Numbered from the stretch's first letter, positions 1 to 8,663 are shown. The stretch: 8,663 bases of DNA from Paraphysomonas bandaiensis (GCA_965644295.1 CBFFRP010000621.1:1-8663); one strand, 5' to 3'. Program-made: numbers and translations. Notes: generated by a model not told the origin, from the letters alone.

Positions 1-3000
1 TGCTACCACGAGAACCATAACCACTTACAATTGTCAAACGGCCACCACTCTGGGAAGATGAAGTACCAGCAGACAATGCCAACTCACCACCAGAACCACT
101 GTTGCCAGATCCTACTGTCACATACACTGAACCACCACGACCACTTGAACCAGATCCACTGCCAATGTACAACGAACCACTGTTGCCTCGACTAGAAGTA
201 CCAGTACTCAACACCAATTGACCACTCACACCAGATGATCCAGCATTAGCAGTCAGCAAAGACAACGCTCCACTGGATCGCTCTGAACTGAAACCAGTAA
301 CTATTGCCAAACGACCACCACTCTGGGAAGATGAAGTACCAGCAGATAATGCCAACTCACCACCTGATCCACTGTTGCCAGATCCTACTGTCACATACAC
401 TGAACCACCACGACCACTTGCACCAGATCCACTGCCAATGTACAACGAACCACTGTTGCCTCGACTAGAAGTACCAGTACTCAACACCAATTGACCACTC
501 ACACCAGATGATCCTGCATTAGCAGTCAACAAAGACAATGCTCCACTACTGCCACGAGAACCATAACCACTTACAATTGTCAAACGACCACCACTCTGGG
601 AAGATGAAGTACCAGCAGATAATGCCAACTCACCACCTGATCCACTGTTGCCAGATCCTACTGTCACATACACTGAACCACCACGACCACTTGATGCAGA
701 TCCACTACCAATATACAACGAACCACTGTTGCCTCGACTAGAAGTACCAGTACTCAACACCAATTGACCACTCACACCAGATGATCCAGCATTAGCAGTC
801 AACAAAGACAATGCTCCACTACTTCCCACAGCTCCAGAACCAGTAACTATTGTCAAACGACCACCACTCTCCGATGATGACTCGCCAGCTGACAACATCA
901 ACTCACCACCAGAACCACTGTTGCCGGATCCTACTGTCACATACACTGAACCACCACGACCACTTGATGCAGATCCACTGCCAATGTACAATGAACCACT
1001 GTTGCCTCGACTAGAAGTACCAGTACTCAACACCAATTGACCACTCACACCAGATGATCCAGCATTAGCAGTCAACAAAGACAATGATCCACTGGATCGC
1101 TCCGAACTATAACCAGTGACAATTGTCAAACGACCACCACTCTCCGATGATGACTCGCCAGCAGACAACATCAACTCACCACCTGATCCACTGTTGCCTG
1201 ATCCTACTGTCACATACACTGAACCACCACGACCACTTGCACCAGATCCACTGCCAATGTACAATGAACCACTGTTGCCTCGACTAGAAGTACCAGTACT
1301 CAACACCAATTGACCACTCACACCAGATGATCCAGCATTAGCAGTCAACAAAGACAGCGCTCCACTACTACCCACAGATCCAGAACCAGTTACAATTGTC
1401 AAGCGACCACCACTCTCCGATGATGACTCGCCAGCTGACAACATCAACTCACCACCTGATCCACTGTCACCTGATCCTACTGTCACATACACTGAACCAC
1501 CACGACCACTTGATGCAGATCCACTGCCAATGTACAACGAACCACTGTTGCCCTTACTAGAAGTACCAGTACTCAACACCAATTGACCACTCACACCAGA
1601 TGATCCAGCATTAGCAGTCAACAAAGACAATGCTCCACTACTACCCACAGATCCAGAACCAGTTACAATTGTCAAACGACCACCACTCTCCGATGATGTC
1701 TCGCCAGCTGACAACATCAACTCACCACCTGATCCACTGTTGCCGGATCCTACTGTCACATACACTGAACCACCACGACCACTTGCACCAGATCCACTAC
1801 CAATGTACAACGAACCACTGTTGCCTCTACTAGAAGTACCAGTACTCAACACCAATTGACCACTCACACCAGATAATCCAGCATTAGCAGTCAACAAGGA
1901 CAATGCTCCACTACTTCCCTCAGACCCAGAACCAGTAACAATTGTCAAACGACCGCCACTCTCCGATGATGACTCGCCAGCTGACAACATCAACTCACCA
2001 CCTGATCCACTGTTGCCAGATCCTACTGTCACATACACTGAACCACCACGACCACTTGATGCAGATCCACTACCAATGTACAACGAACCACTGTTGCCTC
2101 GACTAGAAGTACCAGTACTCAACACCAATTGACCACTCACACCAGATGATCCAGCATTAGCAGTCAACAAAGACAATGCTCCACTGCTACCACGAGAACC
2201 ATATCCACTTACAACTGTCAAACGACCACCACTCTCCGAGGATGACTCGCCAGCTGACAACATCAACTCACCACCTGATCCACTGTCACCTGATCCTACT
2301 GTCACATACACTGAACCACCACGACCACTTGCACCAGATCCACTGCCAATGTACAACGAACCACTGTTGCCCTTACTAGAAGTACCAGTACTCAACACCA
2401 ATTGACCACTCACACCAGATGATCCAGCATTAGCAGTCAACAAGGACAATGATCCACTGGATCGCTCTGAACTGAAACCAGTTACAATTGTCAAACGACC
2501 ACCACTCTGGGAAGATGAAGTACCTGCAGATAATGCCAACTCACCACCTGATCCACTGTTGCCAGATCCTACTGTCACATACACTGAACCACCACGACCA
2601 CTTGCACCAGATCCACTACCAATGTACAACGAACCACTGTTGCCTCGACTAGAAGTTCCAGTACTCAACACCAATTGACCACTCACACCAGATGATCCAG
2701 CATTAGCAGTCAACAAAGACAATGCTCCACTGCTGCCACGAGAACCATAACCAGAAACAATTGTCAAACGACCACCACTCTGGGAAGATGAAGTACCAGC
2801 AGATAATGCCAACTCACCACCTGATCCACTGTTGCCAGATCCTACTGTCACATACACTGAACCACCACGACCACTTGATGCAGATCCACTACCAATATAC
2901 AACGAACCACTGTTGCCTCGACTAGAAGTACCAGTACTCAACACCAATTGACCACTCACACCAGATGATCCTGCATTAGCAGTCAACAAAGACAATGCTC

Positions 3001-6000
3001 CACTACTTCCCACAGCTCCAGAACCAGTAACTATTGTCAAACGACCACCACTCTCCGATGATGACTCGCCAGCTGACAACATCAACTCACCACCTGATCC
3101 ACTGTTGCCGGATCCTACTGTCACATACACTGAACCACCACGACCACTTGATGCAGATCCACTACCAATATACAACGAACCACTGTTGCCCTTACTAGCA
3201 GTTCCAGTACTCAACACCAATTGACCACTCACACCTGATGATCCAGCATTAGCAGTCAACAAAGACAATGCTCCACTAGATCGCTCTGAACTGAAACCAG
3301 TAACTATTGTCAAACGACCACCACTCTCCGATGATGACTCGCCAGCTGACAACATCAACTCTCCACCTGATCCACTGTTGCCAGATCCTACTGTCACATA
3401 CACTGAACCACCACGACCACTTGATGCAGATCCACTGCCAATGTACAACGAACCACTGTTGCCTCGACTAGAAGTTCCAGTACTCAACACCAATTGACCA
3501 CTCACACCAGATGATCCAGCATTAGCAGTCAACAAAGACAATGCTCCACTGCTGCCACGAGAACCATAACCAGAAACAATTGTCAAACGACCACCACTCT
3601 GGGAAGATGAAGTACCAGCAGATAATGCCAACTCACCACCTGATCCACTGTTGCCAGATCCTACTGTCACATACACTGACCCACCACGACCACTTGATGC
3701 AGATCCACTACCAATATACAACGAACCACTGTTGCCTCGACTAGAAGTACCGGTACTCAACACCAATTGACCACTCACACCAGATGATCCAGCATTAGCA
3801 GTCAACAAAGACAACGCTCCACTACTTCCCACAGACCCAGAACCAGTTACTATTGTCAAACGACCACCACTCTCCGATGATGACTCGCCAGCTGACAACA
3901 TCAACTCACCACCTGATCCACTGTTGCCAGATCCTACTGTCACATACACTGAACCACCACGACCACTTGCACCAGATCCACTGCCAATGTACAACGAACC
4001 ACTGTTGCCCTTACTAGAAGTACCAGTACTCAACACCAATTGACCACTCACACCAGATGATCCAGCATTGGCAGTCAACAAGGACAATGCTCCACTGGAT
4101 CGCTCTGAACTGTAACCAGTTACAATTGTCAAACGACCACCACTCTCCGATGATGACTCGCCAGCTGACAACATCAACTCACCACCTGATCCACTGTTGC
4201 CAGATCCTACTGTCACATACACTGAACCACCACGACCACTTGCACCAGATCCACTACCAATGTACAACGAACCACTGTTGCCTCTACTAGAAGTACCAGT
4301 ACTCAACACCAATTGACCACTCACACCAGATGATCCAGCATTGGCAGTCAACAAGGACAATGCTCCACTGGATCGCTCTGAACTGTAACCAGTTACAATT
4401 GTCAAACGACCACCACTCTCCGAGGATGACTCGCCAGCTGACAACATCAACTCACCACCTGATCCACTGTTGCCGGATCCTACTGTCACATACACTGAAC
4501 CACCACGACCACTTGCACCAGATCCACTACCAATGTACAACGAACCACTGTTGCCTCGACTAGAAGTACCAGTACTCAACACCAATTGACCACTCACACC
4601 AGATGATCCAGCATTAGCAGTCAACAAGGACAATGCTCCACTACTTCCCACAGATCCAGAACCAGTAACAATTGTCAAACGACCACCACTCTCCGATGAT
4701 GACTCGCCAGCTGACAACATCAACTCACCACCTGATCCACTGTTGCCAGATCCTACTGTCACATACACTGAACCACCACGTCCACTTGCACCAGATCCAC
4801 TGCCAATGTACAACGAACCACTGTTGCCTCGACTAGAAGTACCAGTACTCAACACCAATTGACCACTCACACCAGATGATCCAGCATTAGCAGTAAACAG
4901 GGACAACGATCCACTGCTGCCACGTGTTCCTGAACCAGTTACAATTGTCAAACGACCACCACTCTCCGATGATGTCTCGCCAGCTGACAACATCAACTCT
5001 CCACCTGATCCACTGTTGCCTGATCCTACTGTCACATACACTGAACCACCACGACCACTTGCACCAGATCCACTGCCAATGTACAACGAACCACTGTTGC
5101 CCTTACTAGAAGTACCAGTACTCAACACCAATTGACCACTCACACCAGATGATCCCGCATTAGCAGTCAACAAGGACAATGCTCCACTGGATCGCTCTGA
5201 ACTATAACCAGTTACAATTGTCAAACGACCACCACTCTCCGATGATGACTCGCCAGCTGACAACATCAACTCACCACCTGATCCACTGTTGCCAGATCCT
5301 ACTGTCACATACACTGAACCACCACGGCCACTTGCACCAGATCCACTGCCAATGTACAATGAACCACTGTTGCCTCGACTAGAAGTACCAGTACTCAACA
5401 CCAATTGACCACTCACACCAGATGATCCAGCATTAGCAGTCAACAAGGACAATGCTCCACTGGATCGCTCTGAACTGAAACCAGTTACAATTGTCAAACG
5501 ACCACCACTCTCCGAGGATGACTCGCCAGCTGACAACATCAACTCACCACCTGATCCACTGTTGCCAGATCCTACTGTCACATACACTGAACCACCACGA
5601 CCACTTGCACCAGATCCACTGCCAATGTACAACGAACCACTGTTGCCTCGACTAGAAGTACCAGTACTCAACACCAATTGACCACTCACACCAGATGATC
5701 CCGCATTAGCAGTCAACAAGGACAATGCTCCACTGGATCGCTCTGAACTATAACCAGTTACAATTGTCAAACGACCACCACTCTCCGAGGATGACTCGCC
5801 AGCTGACAACATCAACTCACCACCTGATCCACTGTTGCCAGATCCTACTGTCACATACACTGAACCACCACGACCACTTGCACCAGATCCACTGCCAATG
5901 TACAACGAACCACTGTTGCCCTTACTAGAAGTACCAGTACTCAACACCAATTGACCACTCACACCAGATGATCCAGCATTAGCAGTCAACAAAGACAATG

Positions 6001-8628
6001 CTCCACTACTACCCACAGATCCAGAACCAGTAACTATTGTCAAACGACCACCACTCTCCGATGATGACTCGCCAGCTGACAACATCAACTCACCACCTGA
6101 TCCACTGTTGCCAGATCCTACTGTCACATACACTGAACCACCACGACCACTTGCACCAGATCCACTGCCAATGTACAACGAACCACTGTTGCCTCGACTA
6201 GAAGTACCAGTACTCAACACCAATTGACCACTCACACCAGATGATCCAGCATTAGCAGTCAACAAGGACAATGCTCCACTGGATCGCTCTGAACTATAAC
6301 CAGTAACAATTGTCAAACGACCACCACTCTCCGAGGATGACTCGCCAGCTGACAACATCAACTCACCACCTGATCCACTGTTGCCAGATCCTACTGTCAC
6401 ATACACTGAACCACCACGACCACTTGATGCAGATCCACTGCCAATGTACAACGAACCACTGTTGCCTCGACTAGAAGTACCAGTACTCAACACCAATTGA
6501 CCACTCACACCAGATGATCCAGCATTAGCAGTCAACAAGGACAATGCTCCACTGGATCGCTCTGAACTATAACCAGTAACAATTGTCAAACGACCACCAC
6601 TCTCCGAGGATGACTCGCCAGCTGACAACATCAACTCACCACCTGATCCACTGTTGCCAGATCCTACTGTCACATACACTGAACCACCACGACCACTGGA
6701 TGCAGATCCACTGCCAATGTACAACGAACCACTGTTGCCTCGACTAGAAGTACCAGTACTCAACACCAATTGACCACTCACACCAGATGATCCAGCATTA
6801 GCAGTCAACAAAGACAATGCTCCACTGGATCGCTCTGAACTGTAACCAGTTACAATTGTCAAACGACCACCACTCTCCGATGATGACTCGCCAGCTGACA
6901 ACATCAACTCACCACCTGATCCACTGTTGCCTGATCCTACTGTCACATACACTGAACCACCACGGCCACTTGCACCAGATCCACTGCCAATGTACAACGA
7001 ACCACTGTTACCCTTACTAGAAGTACCAGTACTCAACACCAATTGACCACTCACACCAGATGATCCCGCATTAGCAGTCAACAGGGACAATGCTCCACTG
7101 CTGCCACGTGTTCCTGAACCAGTTACAATTGTCAAACGACCACCACTCTCCGATGATGTCTCGCCAGCTGACAACATCAACTCACCACCTGATCCACTGT
7201 TGCCAGATCCTACTGTCACATACACTGAACCACCACGACCACTTGCACCAGATCCACTGCCAATGTACAACGAACCACTGTTGCCTCGACTAGAAGTACC
7301 AGTACTCAACACCAATTGACCACTCACACCAGATGATCCAGCATTAGCAGTCAACAAGGACAATGCTCCACTGGATCGCTCTGAACTATAACCAGTTACA
7401 ATTGTCAAACGACCACCACTCTCCGAGGATGACTCGCCAGCTGACAACATCAACTCACCACCTGATCCACTGTTGCCGGATCCCACTGTCACATACACTG
7501 AACCACCACGACCACTTGCACCAGATCCACTGCCAATATACAACGAACCACTGTTGCCTCGACTAGAAGTACCAGTACTCAACACCAATTGACCACTCAC
7601 ACCAGATGATCCCGCATTAGCAGTCAACAAGGACAATGCTCCACTGGATCGCTCTGAACTGAAACCAGTAACAATTGCCAAACGACCACCACTCTCCGAT
7701 GATGACTCGCCAGCTGACAACATCAACTCACCACCTGATCCACTGTTGCCAGATCCTACTGTCACATACACTGAACCACCACGACCACTTGCACCAGATC
7801 CACTGCCAATGTACAATGAACCACTGTTGCCTCGACTAGAAGTACCAGTACTCAACACCAATTGACCACTCACACCAGATGATCCAGCATTGGCAGTCAA
7901 CAAGGACAATGCTCCACTGGATCGCTCTGAACTATAACCAGTGACAATTGTCAAACGACCACCACTCTCCGATGATGACTCGCCAGCTGACAACATCAAC
8001 TCACCACCTGATCCACTGTTGCCAGATCCTACTGTCACATACACTGAACCACCACGTCCACTTGCACCAGATCCACTGCCAATGTACAACGAACCACTGT
8101 TGCCTCGACTAGAAGTACCAGTACTCATCACCAATTGACCACTCACACCTGATGATCCTGCATTAGCAGTAAACAGGGACAACGATCCACTGCTGCCACG
8201 TGTTCCAGAACCAGTTACAATTGTCAAACGACCACCACTCTCCGATGATGACTCGCCAGCTGACAACATCAACTCACCACCTGATCCACTGTTGCCAGAT
8301 CCTACTGTCACATACACTGAACCACCACGACCACTTGCACCAGATCCACTGCCAATGTACAACGAACCACTGTTGCCTCGACTAGAAGTACCAGTACTCA
8401 ACACCAATTGACCACTCACACCAGATGATCCCGCATTAGCAGTCAACAAGGACAATGCTCCACTGCTGCCACGCGTTCCTGAACCAGTAACAATTGTCAA
8501 ACGACCACCACTCTCCGATGATGACTCGCCAGCTGACAACATCAACTCACCACCTGATCCACTGTTGCCGGATCCTACTGTCACATACACTGAACCACCA
8601 CGGCCACTTGCACCAGATCCACTGCCAA
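1..8628. repeat. Coding tandem repeat array, 273-bp unit, about 31.6 copies; runs off the left edge of the window
   Basis: CAATTGACC starts at 215, 488, 761, 1034 ... 8132, 8405 (constant 273 spacing, 31 occurrences). Similarity to the consensus ends at 8628 (ACTGCCAA then CAGTAAC instead of TGTACAAC). Confidence 0.99.
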
Positions 8629-8662
8629 CAGTAACATGCAACTGAAACGAAGTACAAGGAAT
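2..8662 (-). CDS. Partial CDS (no stop and no convincing start in window) of a giant Gly/Ser-rich tandem-repeat protein with a 91-aa unit; predicted beta-solenoid or fibrous protein of unknown function. The coding exon may begin at 8641 if 8642-8663 is intron.
   Basis: Manual translation of the reverse complement from 8662 gives IPCTSFQLHVTVGSGSGASGRGGSVYVTVGSGNSGSGGELMLSAGESSSESGGRLTIVTGSGTRGSSGALSLLTANAGSSGVSGQLVLSTGTSSRGNSGSLYIGSGSGAS..., ending ...IVSGYGSRGS at position 2 in the same frame. The unit length is 273 = 91 codons with no indels. No stop was found in the consensus or in the variants I inspected. Most differences between units fall at third codon positions. The hydrophobic/Gly pattern is protein-like. 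Confidence 0.92.
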   Translation of the reverse strand, partial: MPCTSFQLHVTVGSGSGASGRGGSVYVTVGSGNSGSGGELMLSAGESSSESGGRLTIVTGSGTRGSSGALSLLTANAGSSGVSGQLVLSTGTSSRGNSGSLYIGSGSGASGRGGSVYVTVGSGNSGSGGELMLSAGESSSESGGRLTIVTGSGTRGSSGSLSLFTANAGSSGVSGQLVMSTGTSSRGNSGSLYIGSGSGASGRGGSVYVTVGSGNSGSGGELMLSAGESSSESGGRLTIVTGYSSERSSGALSLLTANAGSSGVSGQLVLSTGTSSRGNSGSLYIGSGSGASGRGGSVYVTVGSGNSGSGGELMLSAGESSSESGGRLAIVTGFSSERSSGALSLLTANAGSSGVSGQLVLSTGTSSRGNSGSLYIGSGSGASGRGGSVYVTVGSGNSGSGGELMLSAGESSSESGGRLTIVTGYSSERSSGALSLLTANAGSSGVSGQLVLSTGTSSRGNSGSLYIGSGSGASGRGGSVYVTVGSGNSGSGGELMLSAGETSSESGGRLTIVTGSGTRGSSGALSLLTANAGSSGVSGQLVLSTGTSSKGNSGSLYIGSGSGASGRGGSVYVTVGSGNSGSGGELMLSAGESSSESGGRLTIVTGYSSERSSGALSLLTANAGSSGVSGQLVLSTGTSSRGNSGSLYIGSGSASSGRGGSVYVTVGSGNSGSGGELMLSAGESSSESGGRLTIVTGYSSERSSGALSLLTANAGSSGVSGQLVLSTGTSSRGNSGSLYIGSGSASSGRGGSVYVTVGSGNSGSGGELMLSAGESSSESGGRLTIVTGYSSERSSGALSLLTANAGSSGVSGQLVLSTGTSSRGNSGSLYIGSGSGASGRGGSVYVTVGSGNSGSGGELMLSAGESSSESGGRLTIVTGSGSVGSSGALSLLTANAGSSGVSGQLVLSTGTSSKGNSGSLYIGSGSGASGRGGSVYVTVGSGNSGSGGELMLSAGESSSESGGRLTIVTGYSSERSSGALSLLTANAGSSGVSGQLVLSTGTSSRGNSGSLYIGSGSGASGRGGSVYVTVGSGNSGSGGELMLSAGESSSESGGRLTIVTGFSSERSSGALSLLTANAGSSGVSGQLVLSTGTSSRGNSGSLYIGSGSGASGRGGSVYVTVGSGNSGSGGELMLSAGESSSESGGRLTIVTGYSSERSSGALSLLTANAGSSGVSGQLVLSTGTSSKGNSGSLYIGSGSGASGRGGSVYVTVGSGNSGSGGELMLSAGETSSESGGRLTIVTGSGTRGSSGSLSLFTANAGSSGVSGQLVLSTGTSSRGNSGSLYIGSGSGASGRGGSVYVTVGSGNSGSGGELMLSAGESSSESGGRLTIVTGSGSVGSSGALSLLTANAGSSGVSGQLVLSTGTSSRGNSGSLYIGSGSGASGRGGSVYVTVGSGNSGSGGELMLSAGESSSESGGRLTIVTGYSSERSSGALSLLTANAGSSGVSGQLVLSTGTSSRGNSGSLYIGSGSGASGRGGSVYVTVGSGNSGSGGELMLSAGESSSESGGRLTIVTGYSSERSSGALSLLTANAGSSGVSGQLVLSTGTSSKGNSGSLYIGSGSGASGRGGSVYVTVGSGNSGSGGELMLSAGESSSESGGRLTIVTGSGSVGSSGALSLLTANAGSSGVSGQLVLSTGTSSRGNSGSLYIGSGSASSGRGGSVYVTVGSGNSGSGGELALSAGTSSSQSGGRLTIVSGYGSRGSSGALSLLTANAGSSGVSGQLVLSTGTSSRGNSGSLYIGSGSASSGRGGSVYVTVGSGNSGSGGELMLSAGESSSESGGRLTIVTGFSSERSSGALSLLTANAGSSGVSGQLVLSTGTASKGNSGSLYIGSGSASSGRGGSVYVTVGSGNSGSGGELMLSAGESSSESGGRLTIVTGSGAVGSSGALSLLTANAGSSGVSGQLVLSTGTSSRGNSGSLYIGSGSASSGRGGSVYVTVGSGNSGSGGELALSAGTSSSQSGGRLTIVSGYGSRGSSGALSLLTANAGSSGVSGQLVLSTGTSSRGNSGSLYIGSGSGASGRGGSVYVTVGSGNSGSGGELALSAGTSSSQSGGRLTIVTGFSSERSSGSLSLLTANAGSSGVSGQLVLSTGTSSKGNSGSLYIGSGSGASGRGGSVYVTVGSGDSGSGGELMLSAGESSSESGGRLTVVSGYGSRGSSGALSLLTANAGSSGVSGQLVLSTGTSSRGNSGSLYIGSGSASSGRGGSVYVTVGSGNSGSGGELMLSAGESSSESGGRLTIVTGSGSEGSSGALSLLTANAGLSGVSGQLVLSTGTSSRGNSGSLYIGSGSGASGRGGSVYVTVGSGNSGSGGELMLSAGETSSESGGRLTIVTGSGSVGSSGALSLLTANAGSSGVSGQLVLSTGTSSKGNSGSLYIGSGSASSGRGGSVYVTVGSGDSGSGGELMLSAGESSSESGGRLTIVTGSGSVGSSGALSLLTANAGSSGVSGQLVLSTGTSSRGNSGSLYIGSGSGASGRGGSVYVTVGSGNSGSGGELMLSAGESSSESGGRLTIVTGYSSERSSGSLSLLTANAGSSGVSGQLVLSTGTSSRGNSGSLYIGSGSASSGRGGSVYVTVGSGNSGSGGELMLSAGESSSESGGRLTIVTGSGAVGSSGALSLLTANAGSSGVSGQLVLSTGTSSRGNSGSLYIGSGSASSGRGGSVYVTVGSGNSGSGGELALSAGTSSSQSGGRLTIVSGYGSRGSSGALSLLTANAGSSGVSGQLVLSTGTSSRGNSGSLYIGSGSGASGRGGSVYVTVGSGNSGSGGELALSAGTSSSQSGGRLAIVTGFSSERSSGALSLLTANAGSSGVSGQLVLSTGTSSRGNSGSLYIGSGSGSSGRGGSVYVTVGSGNSGSGGELALSAGTSSSQSGGRLTIVSGYGSRGS

Positions 8663-8663
8663 T
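8642..8663 (-). other. Putative intron 3' end (polypyrimidine tract plus CAG acceptor, phase 0)
   Basis: The minus strand reads AATTCCTTGTACTTCGTTTCAG|TTGCATGTTACTGTTGGC: a pyrimidine-rich tract ending in TTTCAG, 13 nt before the repeat array starts. In-frame translation of the tract (IPCTSFQ) contains Pro and Cys, which are absent from the repeat. Only 22 nt are visible. Confidence 0.45.

What the first reader, a model, noticed from the sequence alone, without database searches (positions are those of the whole stretch)
2..8641. Nested periodicity: each 91-aa unit is six 15/16-aa coils, predicting a ~190-coil beta-solenoid rod
Seen: the unit splits 15+15+15+16+15+15. Each part has a short alternating hydrophobic strand (SVYVTV, ELMLSA, RLTIVT, ALSLLT, QLVLST, SLYIGS), then a Gly (Ala in coil 4) and a Ser/Gly segment ending in GG or SG. 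Established: Pro-free short repeats with x-L-x-L-x strands and Gly turns are typical of parallel beta-helix/beta-roll folds, with about 4.8 A rise per coil. Inference: about 190 coils would give a rod of roughly 90 nm from this window alone, if it is a single chain with one coil per sub-repeat. The ancestral 45-bp repeat diverged long ago and the 273-bp hexamer was amplified recently.
Basis: partly seen in the sequence, partly recalled or inferred. Interest (0 to 1): 0.75.

Follow-up and report, generated by a model that had tools for sequence, protein, structure and literature searches.

The report
Giant three-chain fibre shaft, nested repeats
The window is part of a gene for a giant fibre protein of a marine protist; its 91-residue modules are indeed each built from six 15/16-residue repeats, but the evidence favours a rope of three intertwined chains, like phage tail fibres, over the proposed single-chain coil.

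Summary
The minus strand is one open frame of 2,887 codons. It holds 31.7 copies of a 273-bp/91-aa unit, and each unit splits 15+15+15+16+15+15 (shift-15 autocorrelation z 7.3).

- **Relatives:** they are 35-63% identical and include oomycete proteins. They keep the same six sub-repeat types in the same order (rank 1 of 120 orders), so the hexamer is old. Only its amplification here is recent.
- **Domain context:** many relatives carry the phage-type self-cleaving intramolecular chaperone (Pfam PF13884), which folds trimeric triple-stranded beta-helices.
- **Predicted structure:** AlphaFold2 with 32 sequences gives a confident model (pLDDT 87.6) with no intra-chain strands. Foldseek finds no solved match. 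Only 3 of 48,161 solved chains resemble it, all triple-stranded beta-helix hyaluronate lyases, and weakly (Z 3.6-4.0).

The best reading is the shaft of a homotrimeric fibre, akin to the recently described TLP-12 protist glycofibril. It is not a closed single-chain solenoid. Its length cannot be fixed, with a range of 90-270 nm; I favour 150-180 nm.

The window contains neither end of the gene.

The parts
2..8662 (-). Open reading frame of 2,887 codons without a stop, cut by both ends of the window. It is an internal fragment of a giant Ser/Gly-rich fibre protein.
   Evidence: Six-frame stop counts; translation in rows of 91; dN/dS 0.26 and an excess of third-position variable sites.
12..8628 (-). 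Tandem array of 31.6 copies of a 273-bp (91-aa) unit.
   Evidence: Tandem Repeats Finder: 93% matches, 0% indels, score 14,159.
7775..8047 (-). One representative 91-aa unit, made of six sub-repeats in the fixed order c1 to c6.
   Evidence: Translation checked. A profile of the unit matches relatives in register over positions 1-91. The native coil order ranks 1 of 120.
8003..8047 (-). Sub-repeat c1 (15 aa, strand SVYVTV).
   Evidence: period 15 confirmed.
7958..8002 (-). Sub-repeat c2 (15 aa, strand ELMLSA).
7913..7957 (-). Sub-repeat c3 (15 aa, strand RLTIVT). It holds the variable five-codon cassette at 7922-7936.
7865..7912 (-). Sub-repeat c4, the only 16-aa one (strand ALSLLT, Ala in place of the Gly after the strand).
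   Evidence: the family consensus keeps the 16-aa c4.
7820..7864 (-). Sub-repeat c5 (15 aa, strand QLVLST).
7775..7819 (-). Sub-repeat c6 (15 aa, strand SLYIGS).
8629..8663 (-). The upstream end in coding direction departs from the repeat (9 odd residues). Its first 22 bases are a pyrimidine-rich run ending in CAG, which looks like a splice acceptor. It may be an intron/exon edge or an assembly end.
   Evidence: Sequence and alignment to two in-register units. This is a reading by eye only.

Best explanation
The window is an internal piece of a gene for a giant, probably secreted, fibre protein of a stramenopile protist. Earlier notes of this scan name the organism as the chrysophyte Paraphysomonas; I did not test that.

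The shaft is built of 91-residue modules. Each module holds six 15/16-residue sub-repeats with the pattern x-h-x-h-x-s-G-x-s-x-x-G-x-s-G, where h is hydrophobic and s is small.

The most likely fold is a homotrimeric, intertwined triple-stranded beta-helix. Three parallel chains wind around one axis, and each face of a triangular prism is a sheet whose neighbouring strands come from different chains. In relatives this fold is set by a self-cleaving intramolecular chaperone (ICA, Pfam Peptidase_S74), as in phage tail fibres, endosialidase tailspikes, MYRF and the TLP-12 protist glycofibril.

I infer, but have not shown, that each sub-repeat spans two sides of the triangle.
- The corners would be Gly7 and Gly14-15.
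- Layers of Leu/Ile/Val would then alternate with layers of small residues in the core.
- The outward Ser/Thr would probably be O-glycosylated.
- The window alone would give a rod of about 150-180 nm.

The length of the rod is set by recent, lineage-specific amplification of the old six-coil module.

The function is inferred only by analogy: a long, stiff extracellular fibre. It could be a cell-surface fibre or, as the scan's earlier notes propose for EGF-headed relatives, the thin filaments of flagellar hairs.
For: Shown:
- Open frame, 273-bp array and 15-aa inner period.
- Purifying selection.
- 45 relatives from three word searches. They include Lagenidium giganteum and Aphanomyces euteiches proteins and Tara-type marine eukaryote transcripts.
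- PF13884 scores above Pfam's cut-off in P0017, P0008, P0022, P0020 and P0027, with 3 copies in P0020.
- The Ser and Lys of the SDxRxK site are kept, and they align to the phage S16 tail fibre 6f45. A profile of the alignment also hits MYRF 7dc3.
- The C-terminus of P0017 matches phage tail-fibre PHROGs, down to E 4e-30.
- P0022 has an N-terminus that looks like a signal peptide by eye, teneurin-type EGF domains, about 7-aa GGLxV repeats, four to five diverged 91-aa modules, more GGLxV repeats, PF13884 and a coiled coil.
- The closest relative, L001, is 63% identical. Its array ends and runs collinearly into the linker and GGLxV repeats of P0008, which ends in PF13884.
- AlphaFold2 on three units with 32 rows: pLDDT 87.6, pTM 0.73, four of five models at 84-88, and no DSSP strand.
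- Foldseek against the PDB finds nothing.
- VIA-align against 48,161 chains leaves only 6wv2_A (Z 4.0, 186 aa aligned, rmsd 5.3), 4ufq_B (Z 3.7) and 2c3f_A (Z 3.6). All are PL16 lyases made of three interwoven chains forming a triple-stranded beta-helix (PMC11669647).
- BFVD: uncultured tailed-phage proteins at E 5e-6 and 25% identity.

Precedent: TLP-12 is a trimer of 12-aa repeats, each spanning two sides of a triangle. It carries dense O-glycans on Ser, and its candidate giant proteins end in an ICA domain (bioRxiv 10.1101/2025.09.30.679562).

Family pattern, from 67 modules in 33 relatives: position 2 is hydrophobic in 96% and position 4 in 97%. G7 is at 80%, position 9 is small in 92%, position 14 is small in 97%, and G15 is at 95%.
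Against: - The window holds no ICA domain, signal peptide or head. Its place in the family rests on homology of the repeat alone.
- The structural matches are weak (Z 3.6-4.0, rmsd 5-6 A).
- Only a monomer could be predicted. A monomer model cannot show a trimer.
- 'DSSP gave nothing' could in principle be a technical failure.
- Model coordinates are not exposed, so I could not measure pitch, handedness or sides per sub-repeat.
- Three conserved Gly sites (7, 12, 15) would also suit a small closed triangular coil.
- Phage tailspikes such as P22 show that a trimer with a C-terminal assembly domain can still hold three separate single-chain beta-helices (own knowledge).
- Glycosylation and function are untested.
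Confidence: 0.6

Rival explanations
1. This is the first reader's model: each chain folds on its own into a closed parallel beta-solenoid with one 15/16-aa coil per 4.8 A. The result is a rod of about 90 nm, possibly with three such rods side by side in a trimer, as in the P22 tailspike.
For: - The 15-aa period with one x-h-x-h-x strand, and conserved Gly at 7, 12 and 15.
- Coils of 15-16 aa exist in spruce budworm antifreeze protein and bacterial ice-nucleation proteins (own knowledge).
- The low-confidence single-sequence model stacked the hydrophobic strands about every 15 aa into a sheet (pLDDT 43).
Against: - The confident alignment-based model has no intra-chain strands.
- Foldseek finds no solved match, and no beta-solenoid is among the three VIA-align chains at Z 2 or more of 48,161. 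Closed solenoids normally find many.
- There is no Pfam solenoid or ice-nucleation family hit.
- Relatives carry the chaperone that folds intertwined trimers.
Confidence: 0.2
2. The gene belongs to a virus or an integrated viral element (a polinton-like virus, a giant virus or a phage contaminant) and encodes a virion fibre. It would then not be a cellular protein.
For: [quoted passage not shown]
- The best predicted-structure neighbours are tailed-phage proteins.
- The top look-alike cluster in the ESM Atlas is partly viral, a weak lead.
Against: - A scan of IMG/VR for close relatives of three units, using the peptide patterns ELMLSAGE and GNSGSLYI, found none. This is a narrow test.
- Relatives have an N-terminus that looks like a signal peptide by eye, EGF heads and VWA/VIT domains. 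They occur in oomycete genome records and on contigs of 25-137 kb.
- That paper found the domain in polinton-like viruses of most groups but not of ochrophytes.
- A fragment of at least 8.6 kb would be a large part of a 14-40 kb element.
Confidence: 0.1
3. The protein has no regular rod. It would be a flexible, mucin-like Ser/Gly-rich spacer, or a string of small six-stranded beta domains, one per 91-aa unit.
For: - 59% of residues are Ser, Thr or Gly.
- There is no Pfam family.
- The single-sequence model was poor.
Against: - Hydrophobic positions 2 and 4 are kept in 96-97% of sub-repeats across the family.
- dN/dS is 0.26.
- pLDDT is 87.6 with an alignment.
- The equal 15-aa spacing of all six strands argues against a globular six-stranded domain.
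Confidence: 0.05

Closest known systems
TLP-12 glycofibril and its candidate giant proteins of Amoebophrya and other alveolates (CryoSeek, bioRxiv 10.1101/2025.09.30.679562)
   Same: - It is a giant protist protein made almost wholly of short Gly/Ser-rich tandem repeats.
- It forms a trimeric triple beta-helix with a triangular section.
- The family has an ICA domain at the C-terminus.
- Many outward Ser residues could carry O-glycans.
   Different: - The repeat here is 15/16 aa, nested in a conserved 91-aa six-type module. It is not a uniform 12-aa GSxxSx7 repeat, and there is no period-12 signal.
- It is stramenopile, not alveolate.
- The trimer, the glycans and the presence of an ICA domain in this very gene are not shown.
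Phage tail fibres and tailspikes with a C-terminal intramolecular chaperone (K1F endosialidase, phage S16 long tail fibre 6f45), and animal MYRF (7dc3)
   Same: - Relatives of the window carry PF13884 with the Ser/Lys cleavage motif.
- The domain is preceded by short Gly-rich beta-helix repeats.
   Different: - These are eukaryotic proteins with EGF heads.
- The shafts are thousands of residues long.
- Some relatives have several internal ICA domains (P0020, P0024).
- The 15-aa repeat itself matches no PHROG tail family convincingly; the only hit is phrog_19856 at E 8e-4.
PL16 hyaluronate lyases HylP, HylP1 and Hyal_Sk (6wv2, 2c3f, 4ufq): triple-stranded beta-helix
   Same: They are the only solved chains that resemble the predicted chain, covering 164-186 of 273 residues.
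   Different: - The similarity is weak (Z 3.6-4.0) and sequence identity is 10-13%.
- There is no sign of lyase residues, and none was tested.
- These enzymes have no tandem repeats.
Single-chain beta-solenoids with 15-16-residue coils (spruce budworm antifreeze protein, bacterial ice-nucleation proteins; own knowledge)
   Same: The repeat length is similar, as are the Thr/Ser/Gly-rich composition and the nested higher-order period.
   Different: - There is no Pfam hit.
- The predicted chain is open, not closed.
- The family context is trimerising fibres.
Stramenopile mastigoneme (flagellar hair) proteins PnMas1-3 with EGF-like domains (bioRxiv 10.64898/2026.09.11.750887)
   Same: Relatives P0021-23 and P0034 begin with Cys-rich EGF-type heads, and the family is stramenopile.
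   Different: - The window has no head.
- I did not test similarity of those heads to PnMas or Ocm proteins.
- The known mastigoneme proteins lie in the tubular shaft and have no such repeats, as far as the paper says.

Membership tests
   Period 15 at z 7.3. Positions 2 and 4 are hydrophobic in 96-97% of sub-repeats; G7 is at 80% and G15 at 95%.
   The model at pLDDT 87.6 has no DSSP strand. Foldseek finds nothing, and no solenoid is among the three VIA-align chains at Z 2 or more. This rests on a prediction only, not a measurement.
   Pfam and NCBIfam give nothing below E 0.9. A PDB sequence search gives nothing.
Triple-stranded beta-helix fibre with ICA / Peptidase_S74 chaperone | A PF13884 domain with the Ser-Lys cleavage dyad, C-terminal to the shaft. 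| tested here: inconclusive
   The domain is absent from the window, whose frame runs off both ends. It is present above the cut-off in relatives with the same repeats, with the SDxRxK motif kept. The closest relative, L001, leads collinearly into P0008's pre-ICA region.
Triple-stranded beta-helix fibre with ICA / Peptidase_S74 chaperone | The chain follows an open spiral like one strand of a solved triple-stranded beta-helix. | tested here: inconclusive
   The only three structural neighbours are such chains, but at Z 3.6-4.0 and rmsd 5-6 A.
Triple-stranded beta-helix fibre with ICA / Peptidase_S74 chaperone | A homotrimer with inter-chain sheets. | not testable with these tools
   Only monomer prediction is offered, and model coordinates are not exposed.
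TLP-12-type glycofibril | A dodecapeptide repeat, GSxxSx7. | tested here: not met
   There is no period-12 signal (z -0.4). The period here is 15/16.
TLP-12-type glycofibril | Dense O-glycans on the repeat's Ser residues. | not testable with these tools
   Ser+Thr make up 34% and there is no N-glycosylation sequon. This is inference only.
Stramenopile mastigoneme proteins | A Cys-rich EGF-like head homologous to PnMas, Ocm or Sig1. | not tested
   The window has none. Relatives have teneurin-type EGF hits. No reference mastigoneme sequence was at hand.

The most novel reading that the evidence does not exclude
The 15-aa repeat is a new kind of triple-stranded beta-helix. Each sub-repeat would give one hydrophobic and one all-small side, so the core alternates bulky and small layers. 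A conserved six-type, 91-aa module would act as a ruler whose copy number sets fibre length. This family would form the so far unassigned thin filaments of stramenopile flagellar hairs, or a comparable surface fibre.
Probability: 0.15. Interest if true: 0.7.

Novelty: new variant of a known kind. Interest (0 to 1): 0.5.

Why it matters
Giant protist proteins built like phage tail fibres were first tied to real, glycan-coated fibrils only in a 2025 preprint, and for one repeat type in alveolates. This window shows a second, well-ordered repeat design in stramenopiles: 15/16-aa sub-repeats in a conserved six-part module. No family model covers it and I found no study of it.

If the trimer model holds, it gives a simple rule for building rods of set length from one module. 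It also gives a concrete candidate for unidentified extracellular filaments of heterotrophic flagellates, which are major grazers in the sea.

For the scan, the result is a caution. A repeat pattern that looks like a solenoid does not show whether one chain or three form the helix.

Tried and rejected
- **Family and sequence searches on the repeat:** Pfam, NCBIfam and a PDB sequence search gave nothing. PHROGs gave only phrog_19856 (unknown function, E 8e-4).
- **Own genome:** none is held.
- **ESM Atlas:** two calls gave only unnamed look-alikes or low scores.
- **Single-sequence AlphaFold2:** pLDDT 43, unusable.
- **Structure searches:** Foldseek against the PDB gave no match, and the second-look run had nothing to compare.
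- **The look-up of encoding contigs:** closed, so the genomic context of relatives could not be read.
- **The search for related loci:** With the protein, IMG/VR gave no relative.
- **The listing of cluster members:** gave no organism names.
- **HylP1 structure paper:** the original paper is not held, so I could not take the dimensions of that helix.
- **Simpler ancestry of the six coil types:** I looked for period 2 or 3 among them by profile similarity and found none.
- **One full turn per 15 aa:** I reject this as unlikely. Threefold symmetry needs equal sides, and the Gly spacing 7/5/3 does not give them (inference).
- It was rerun with the consensus read from file.
- **Big protein search:** The search of protein representatives was not used, because the word searches had already given relatives.


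Full report
**1.

Only the minus-strand frame with codon starts at window positions that leave remainder 1 when divided by 3 is free of stops. It runs 2,887 codons and off both ends of the window. The other five frames hold 46 to 234 stops. That is why ORF listing shows nothing.

Tandem Repeats Finder reports a 273-bp period with 31.6 copies, 93% matches and no indels over 12-8628. Printed in rows of 91, the translation is a near-perfect array.

I verified the coordinates of one unit (7775-8047, minus strand) and its six parts.

The inner period is far beyond chance. Circular autocorrelation of the consensus unit gives z 7.3 at shift 15, and none of 2,000 shuffles reaches it. Lesser peaks fall at 30/31 and 45, and there is none at 12.

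The repeat contains no Pro, Cys, His or Trp. Ser+Thr make up 34% and Gly 25%, and there is no N-x-S/T sequon.

The 31 full units are 92.6% identical pairwise in DNA, with a range of 85.7-99.3%. Variable sites fall 21/9/42 by codon position. dN/dS is 0.26, or 0.17 without a five-codon cassette. This is a real coding sequence under purifying selection.

I could not check whether the assembler got the copy number of such similar repeats right.

**2. What it belongs to.**

Pfam and NCBIfam do not recognise the repeat. No whole genome is held for the window. Earlier notes of this scan say the source is a marine stramenopile, Paraphysomonas. I did not test that.

Three word searches with queries of different lengths found 45 relatives. 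They include proteins of the oomycetes Lagenidium giganteum and Aphanomyces euteiches and marine eukaryote transcript catalogues.

Many relatives carry Pfam PF13884 (Peptidase_S74), the self-cleaving intramolecular chaperone (ICA) of endosialidase tailspikes and phage tail fibres. Rescanning confirms it above Pfam's cut-off in five of them.
- P0017 and P0008: one copy at the C-terminus.
- P0022: one copy at the C-terminus. It follows an N-terminus that looks like a signal peptide by eye, teneurin-type EGF domains, about 7-aa GGLxV repeats, four to five diverged 91-aa modules and a long second run of GGLxV repeats.
- P0020: three internal copies.
- P0027: one copy.

The SDxRxK cleavage motif is kept. 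It aligns residue for residue with the phage S16 long tail fibre 6f45. A profile of the alignment also finds MYRF's ICA domain, 7dc3. The C-terminus of P0017 matches phage tail-fibre PHROGs down to E 4e-30.

The closest relative is a metagenome contig, L001, at 63% identity. It has the same repeats in a 184-aa double unit. Its array then ends and runs through a Pro/Ser linker into GGLxV repeats. This stretch is collinear with P0008 (39% identity over 197 aa, E 4e-20), and P0008 ends in PF13884.

By homology, then, the window is shaft from this fibre family. It contains no head and no ICA domain itself.

**3. The nested repeat is old.**

A profile built from the window's 31 units matches relatives in register over profile positions about 1-91. 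The matches lie in tandem every 85-95 residues, for example in P0021, P0022, P0023, P0034, P0036, P0020 and P0026.

I rebuilt the profile for all 120 cyclic orders of the six sub-repeats and searched the 45 relatives with each. The native order ranks first (z 4.9).

So the six types and their order predate the split of these proteins, which are 35-63% identical to the window. Only the near-identical copies are recent, and amplification was lineage-specific: L001 amplified a 12-coil double unit.

Pooled over 67 modules of 33 relatives, the 15-residue pattern is as follows:
- position 2 is hydrophobic in 96%;
- position 4 is hydrophobic in 97%;
- position 6 is small in 86%;
- position 7 is Gly in 80%;
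- position 9 is small in 92%;
- position 12 is Gly in 56%;
- position 14 is small in 97%;
- position 15 is Gly in 95%.

**4. The fold.**

AlphaFold2 without an alignment was useless (pLDDT 43).

With a 32-row alignment of relatives, 20-32 rows deep over the query, three units gave a confident model. Its pLDDT is 87.6 and pTM 0.73, and four of five models score 84-88. DSSP assigns no strand or helix to any residue.

A closed solenoid has intra-chain parallel sheets, so this model is not one.

Foldseek finds no solved structure at all. An exhaustive alignment to 48,161 representative chains leaves only three at Z 2 or more:
- 6wv2_A: Z 4.0, 186 residues aligned, rmsd 5.3 A;
- 4ufq_B: Z 3.7;
- 2c3f_A: Z 3.6.

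All three are PL16 hyaluronate lyases. These consist of three interwoven chains forming a triple-stranded beta-helix (PMC11669647).

Among predicted viral structures, the best matches are uncharacterised proteins of tailed phages (E 5e-6, 25% identity).

The scores are weak. But the complete absence of solenoid matches, the open chain and the ICA context all point the same way. AlphaFold has drawn one chain of an intertwined trimer.

A direct precedent exists. The TLP-12 glycofibril, solved by cryo-EM, is a trimer of 12-residue Gly/Ser repeats. [quoted passage not shown] Its candidate proteins, up to 19,853 aa, end in an ICA domain (bioRxiv 10.1101/2025.09.30.679562).

**5. Geometry and length (inference).**

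The tools do not expose model coordinates, and only monomers can be predicted. So I could not measure the pitch.

In a triple-stranded helix, each side a chain crosses lifts it by one beta layer. A sub-repeat spanning one, two or three sides gives about 4.8, 9.6 or 14.4 A. For 190 sub-repeats that is 90, 180 or 270 nm.

I favour two sides, for four reasons.
- Threefold symmetry needs equal sides.
- The best-kept Gly sites (7 and 14-15) are 7-8 residues apart.
- The neighbouring GGLxV repeats of relatives have a period of about 7.
- TLP-12 is built this way.

With TLP-12's measured 7.8 A per two-sided repeat, the figure is about 150 nm.

The core would then alternate layers of six Leu/Ile/Val residues with layers of small residues.

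Why six types are kept is unexplained. Three sub-repeats would already bring a chain back to the same face.

**6. Function.**

Nothing here tests function.

The family's likely signal peptides, EGF, VWA and VIT domains and its fibre design point to an extracellular fibre. Earlier notes of this scan propose EGF-headed members as the thin filaments of flagellar hairs. The known mastigoneme proteins, PnMas1-3, have EGF-like domains and sit in the tubular shaft. I did not compare the heads. For this window the proposal stays a lead.

A viral origin is a rival, because polinton-like viruses of protists also carry PF13884 fibres (PMC12220804). I rate it low, for two reasons.
- Relatives have cellular-type heads and lie in oomycete genome records.
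- IMG/VR holds no close relative.

**7. Limits.**

The large representative search was not used, because the word searches had already given relatives.

The scan has noted the same class of fibre on other pieces of this genome.

Noticed in passing
window 7922-7936 (-) and the same five codons of every unit: Residues 38-42 of the unit, in sub-repeat c3, come in seven recurring versions: YSSER x10, FSSER x5, SGSVG x5, SGTRG x4, YGSRG x4, SGAVG x2 and SGSEG x1. There is no simple order along the array. Without this cassette dN/dS falls from 0.26 to 0.17.
   Followed up: partly
window 8629-8663 (-): The upstream end of the frame leaves the repeat. It holds nine odd residues with the only Pro, Cys and His of the protein. 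They are preceded by a pyrimidine-rich run ending in CAG, which looks like a splice acceptor. This may be the true start of the array's exon or an assembly end.
   Followed up: partly
L001 2-3613 and 3614-3811: The closest relative is 63% identical (metagenome contig Ga0157538_150128). It amplified a 184-aa double unit of two alternating module types. After a stop at 3614-3616, the GGLxV repeats go on in another frame, which suggests a frameshift or a very short intron.
   Followed up: partly
P0020, P0024, P0027 (relatives): P0020 has three internal Peptidase_S74 domains by Pfam. P0024 shows the same repeated arrangement in its sequence. P0027 has one by Pfam. In all of these the domains are interspersed with repeat blocks, as if one chain were cut into several fibre pieces or clamped at intervals.
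   Followed up: no
P0038 (relative): One relative joins VIT and von Willebrand A domains to one and a half 91-aa modules at its C-terminus. The module is therefore also used outside the EGF-head/ICA design.
   Followed up: no
P0003 (relative): After one and a half modules, this 359-aa protein continues into an unrelated globular-looking sequence. It is probably a chimeric or frame-shifted gene call.
   Followed up: no
window, whole array: Six coil types are conserved, although a three-sub-repeat period would satisfy the geometry of a two-sided triple helix. Profile similarity among the six types shows no 2x3 or 3x2 ancestry. The reason for a six-part module is unexplained.
   Followed up: partly
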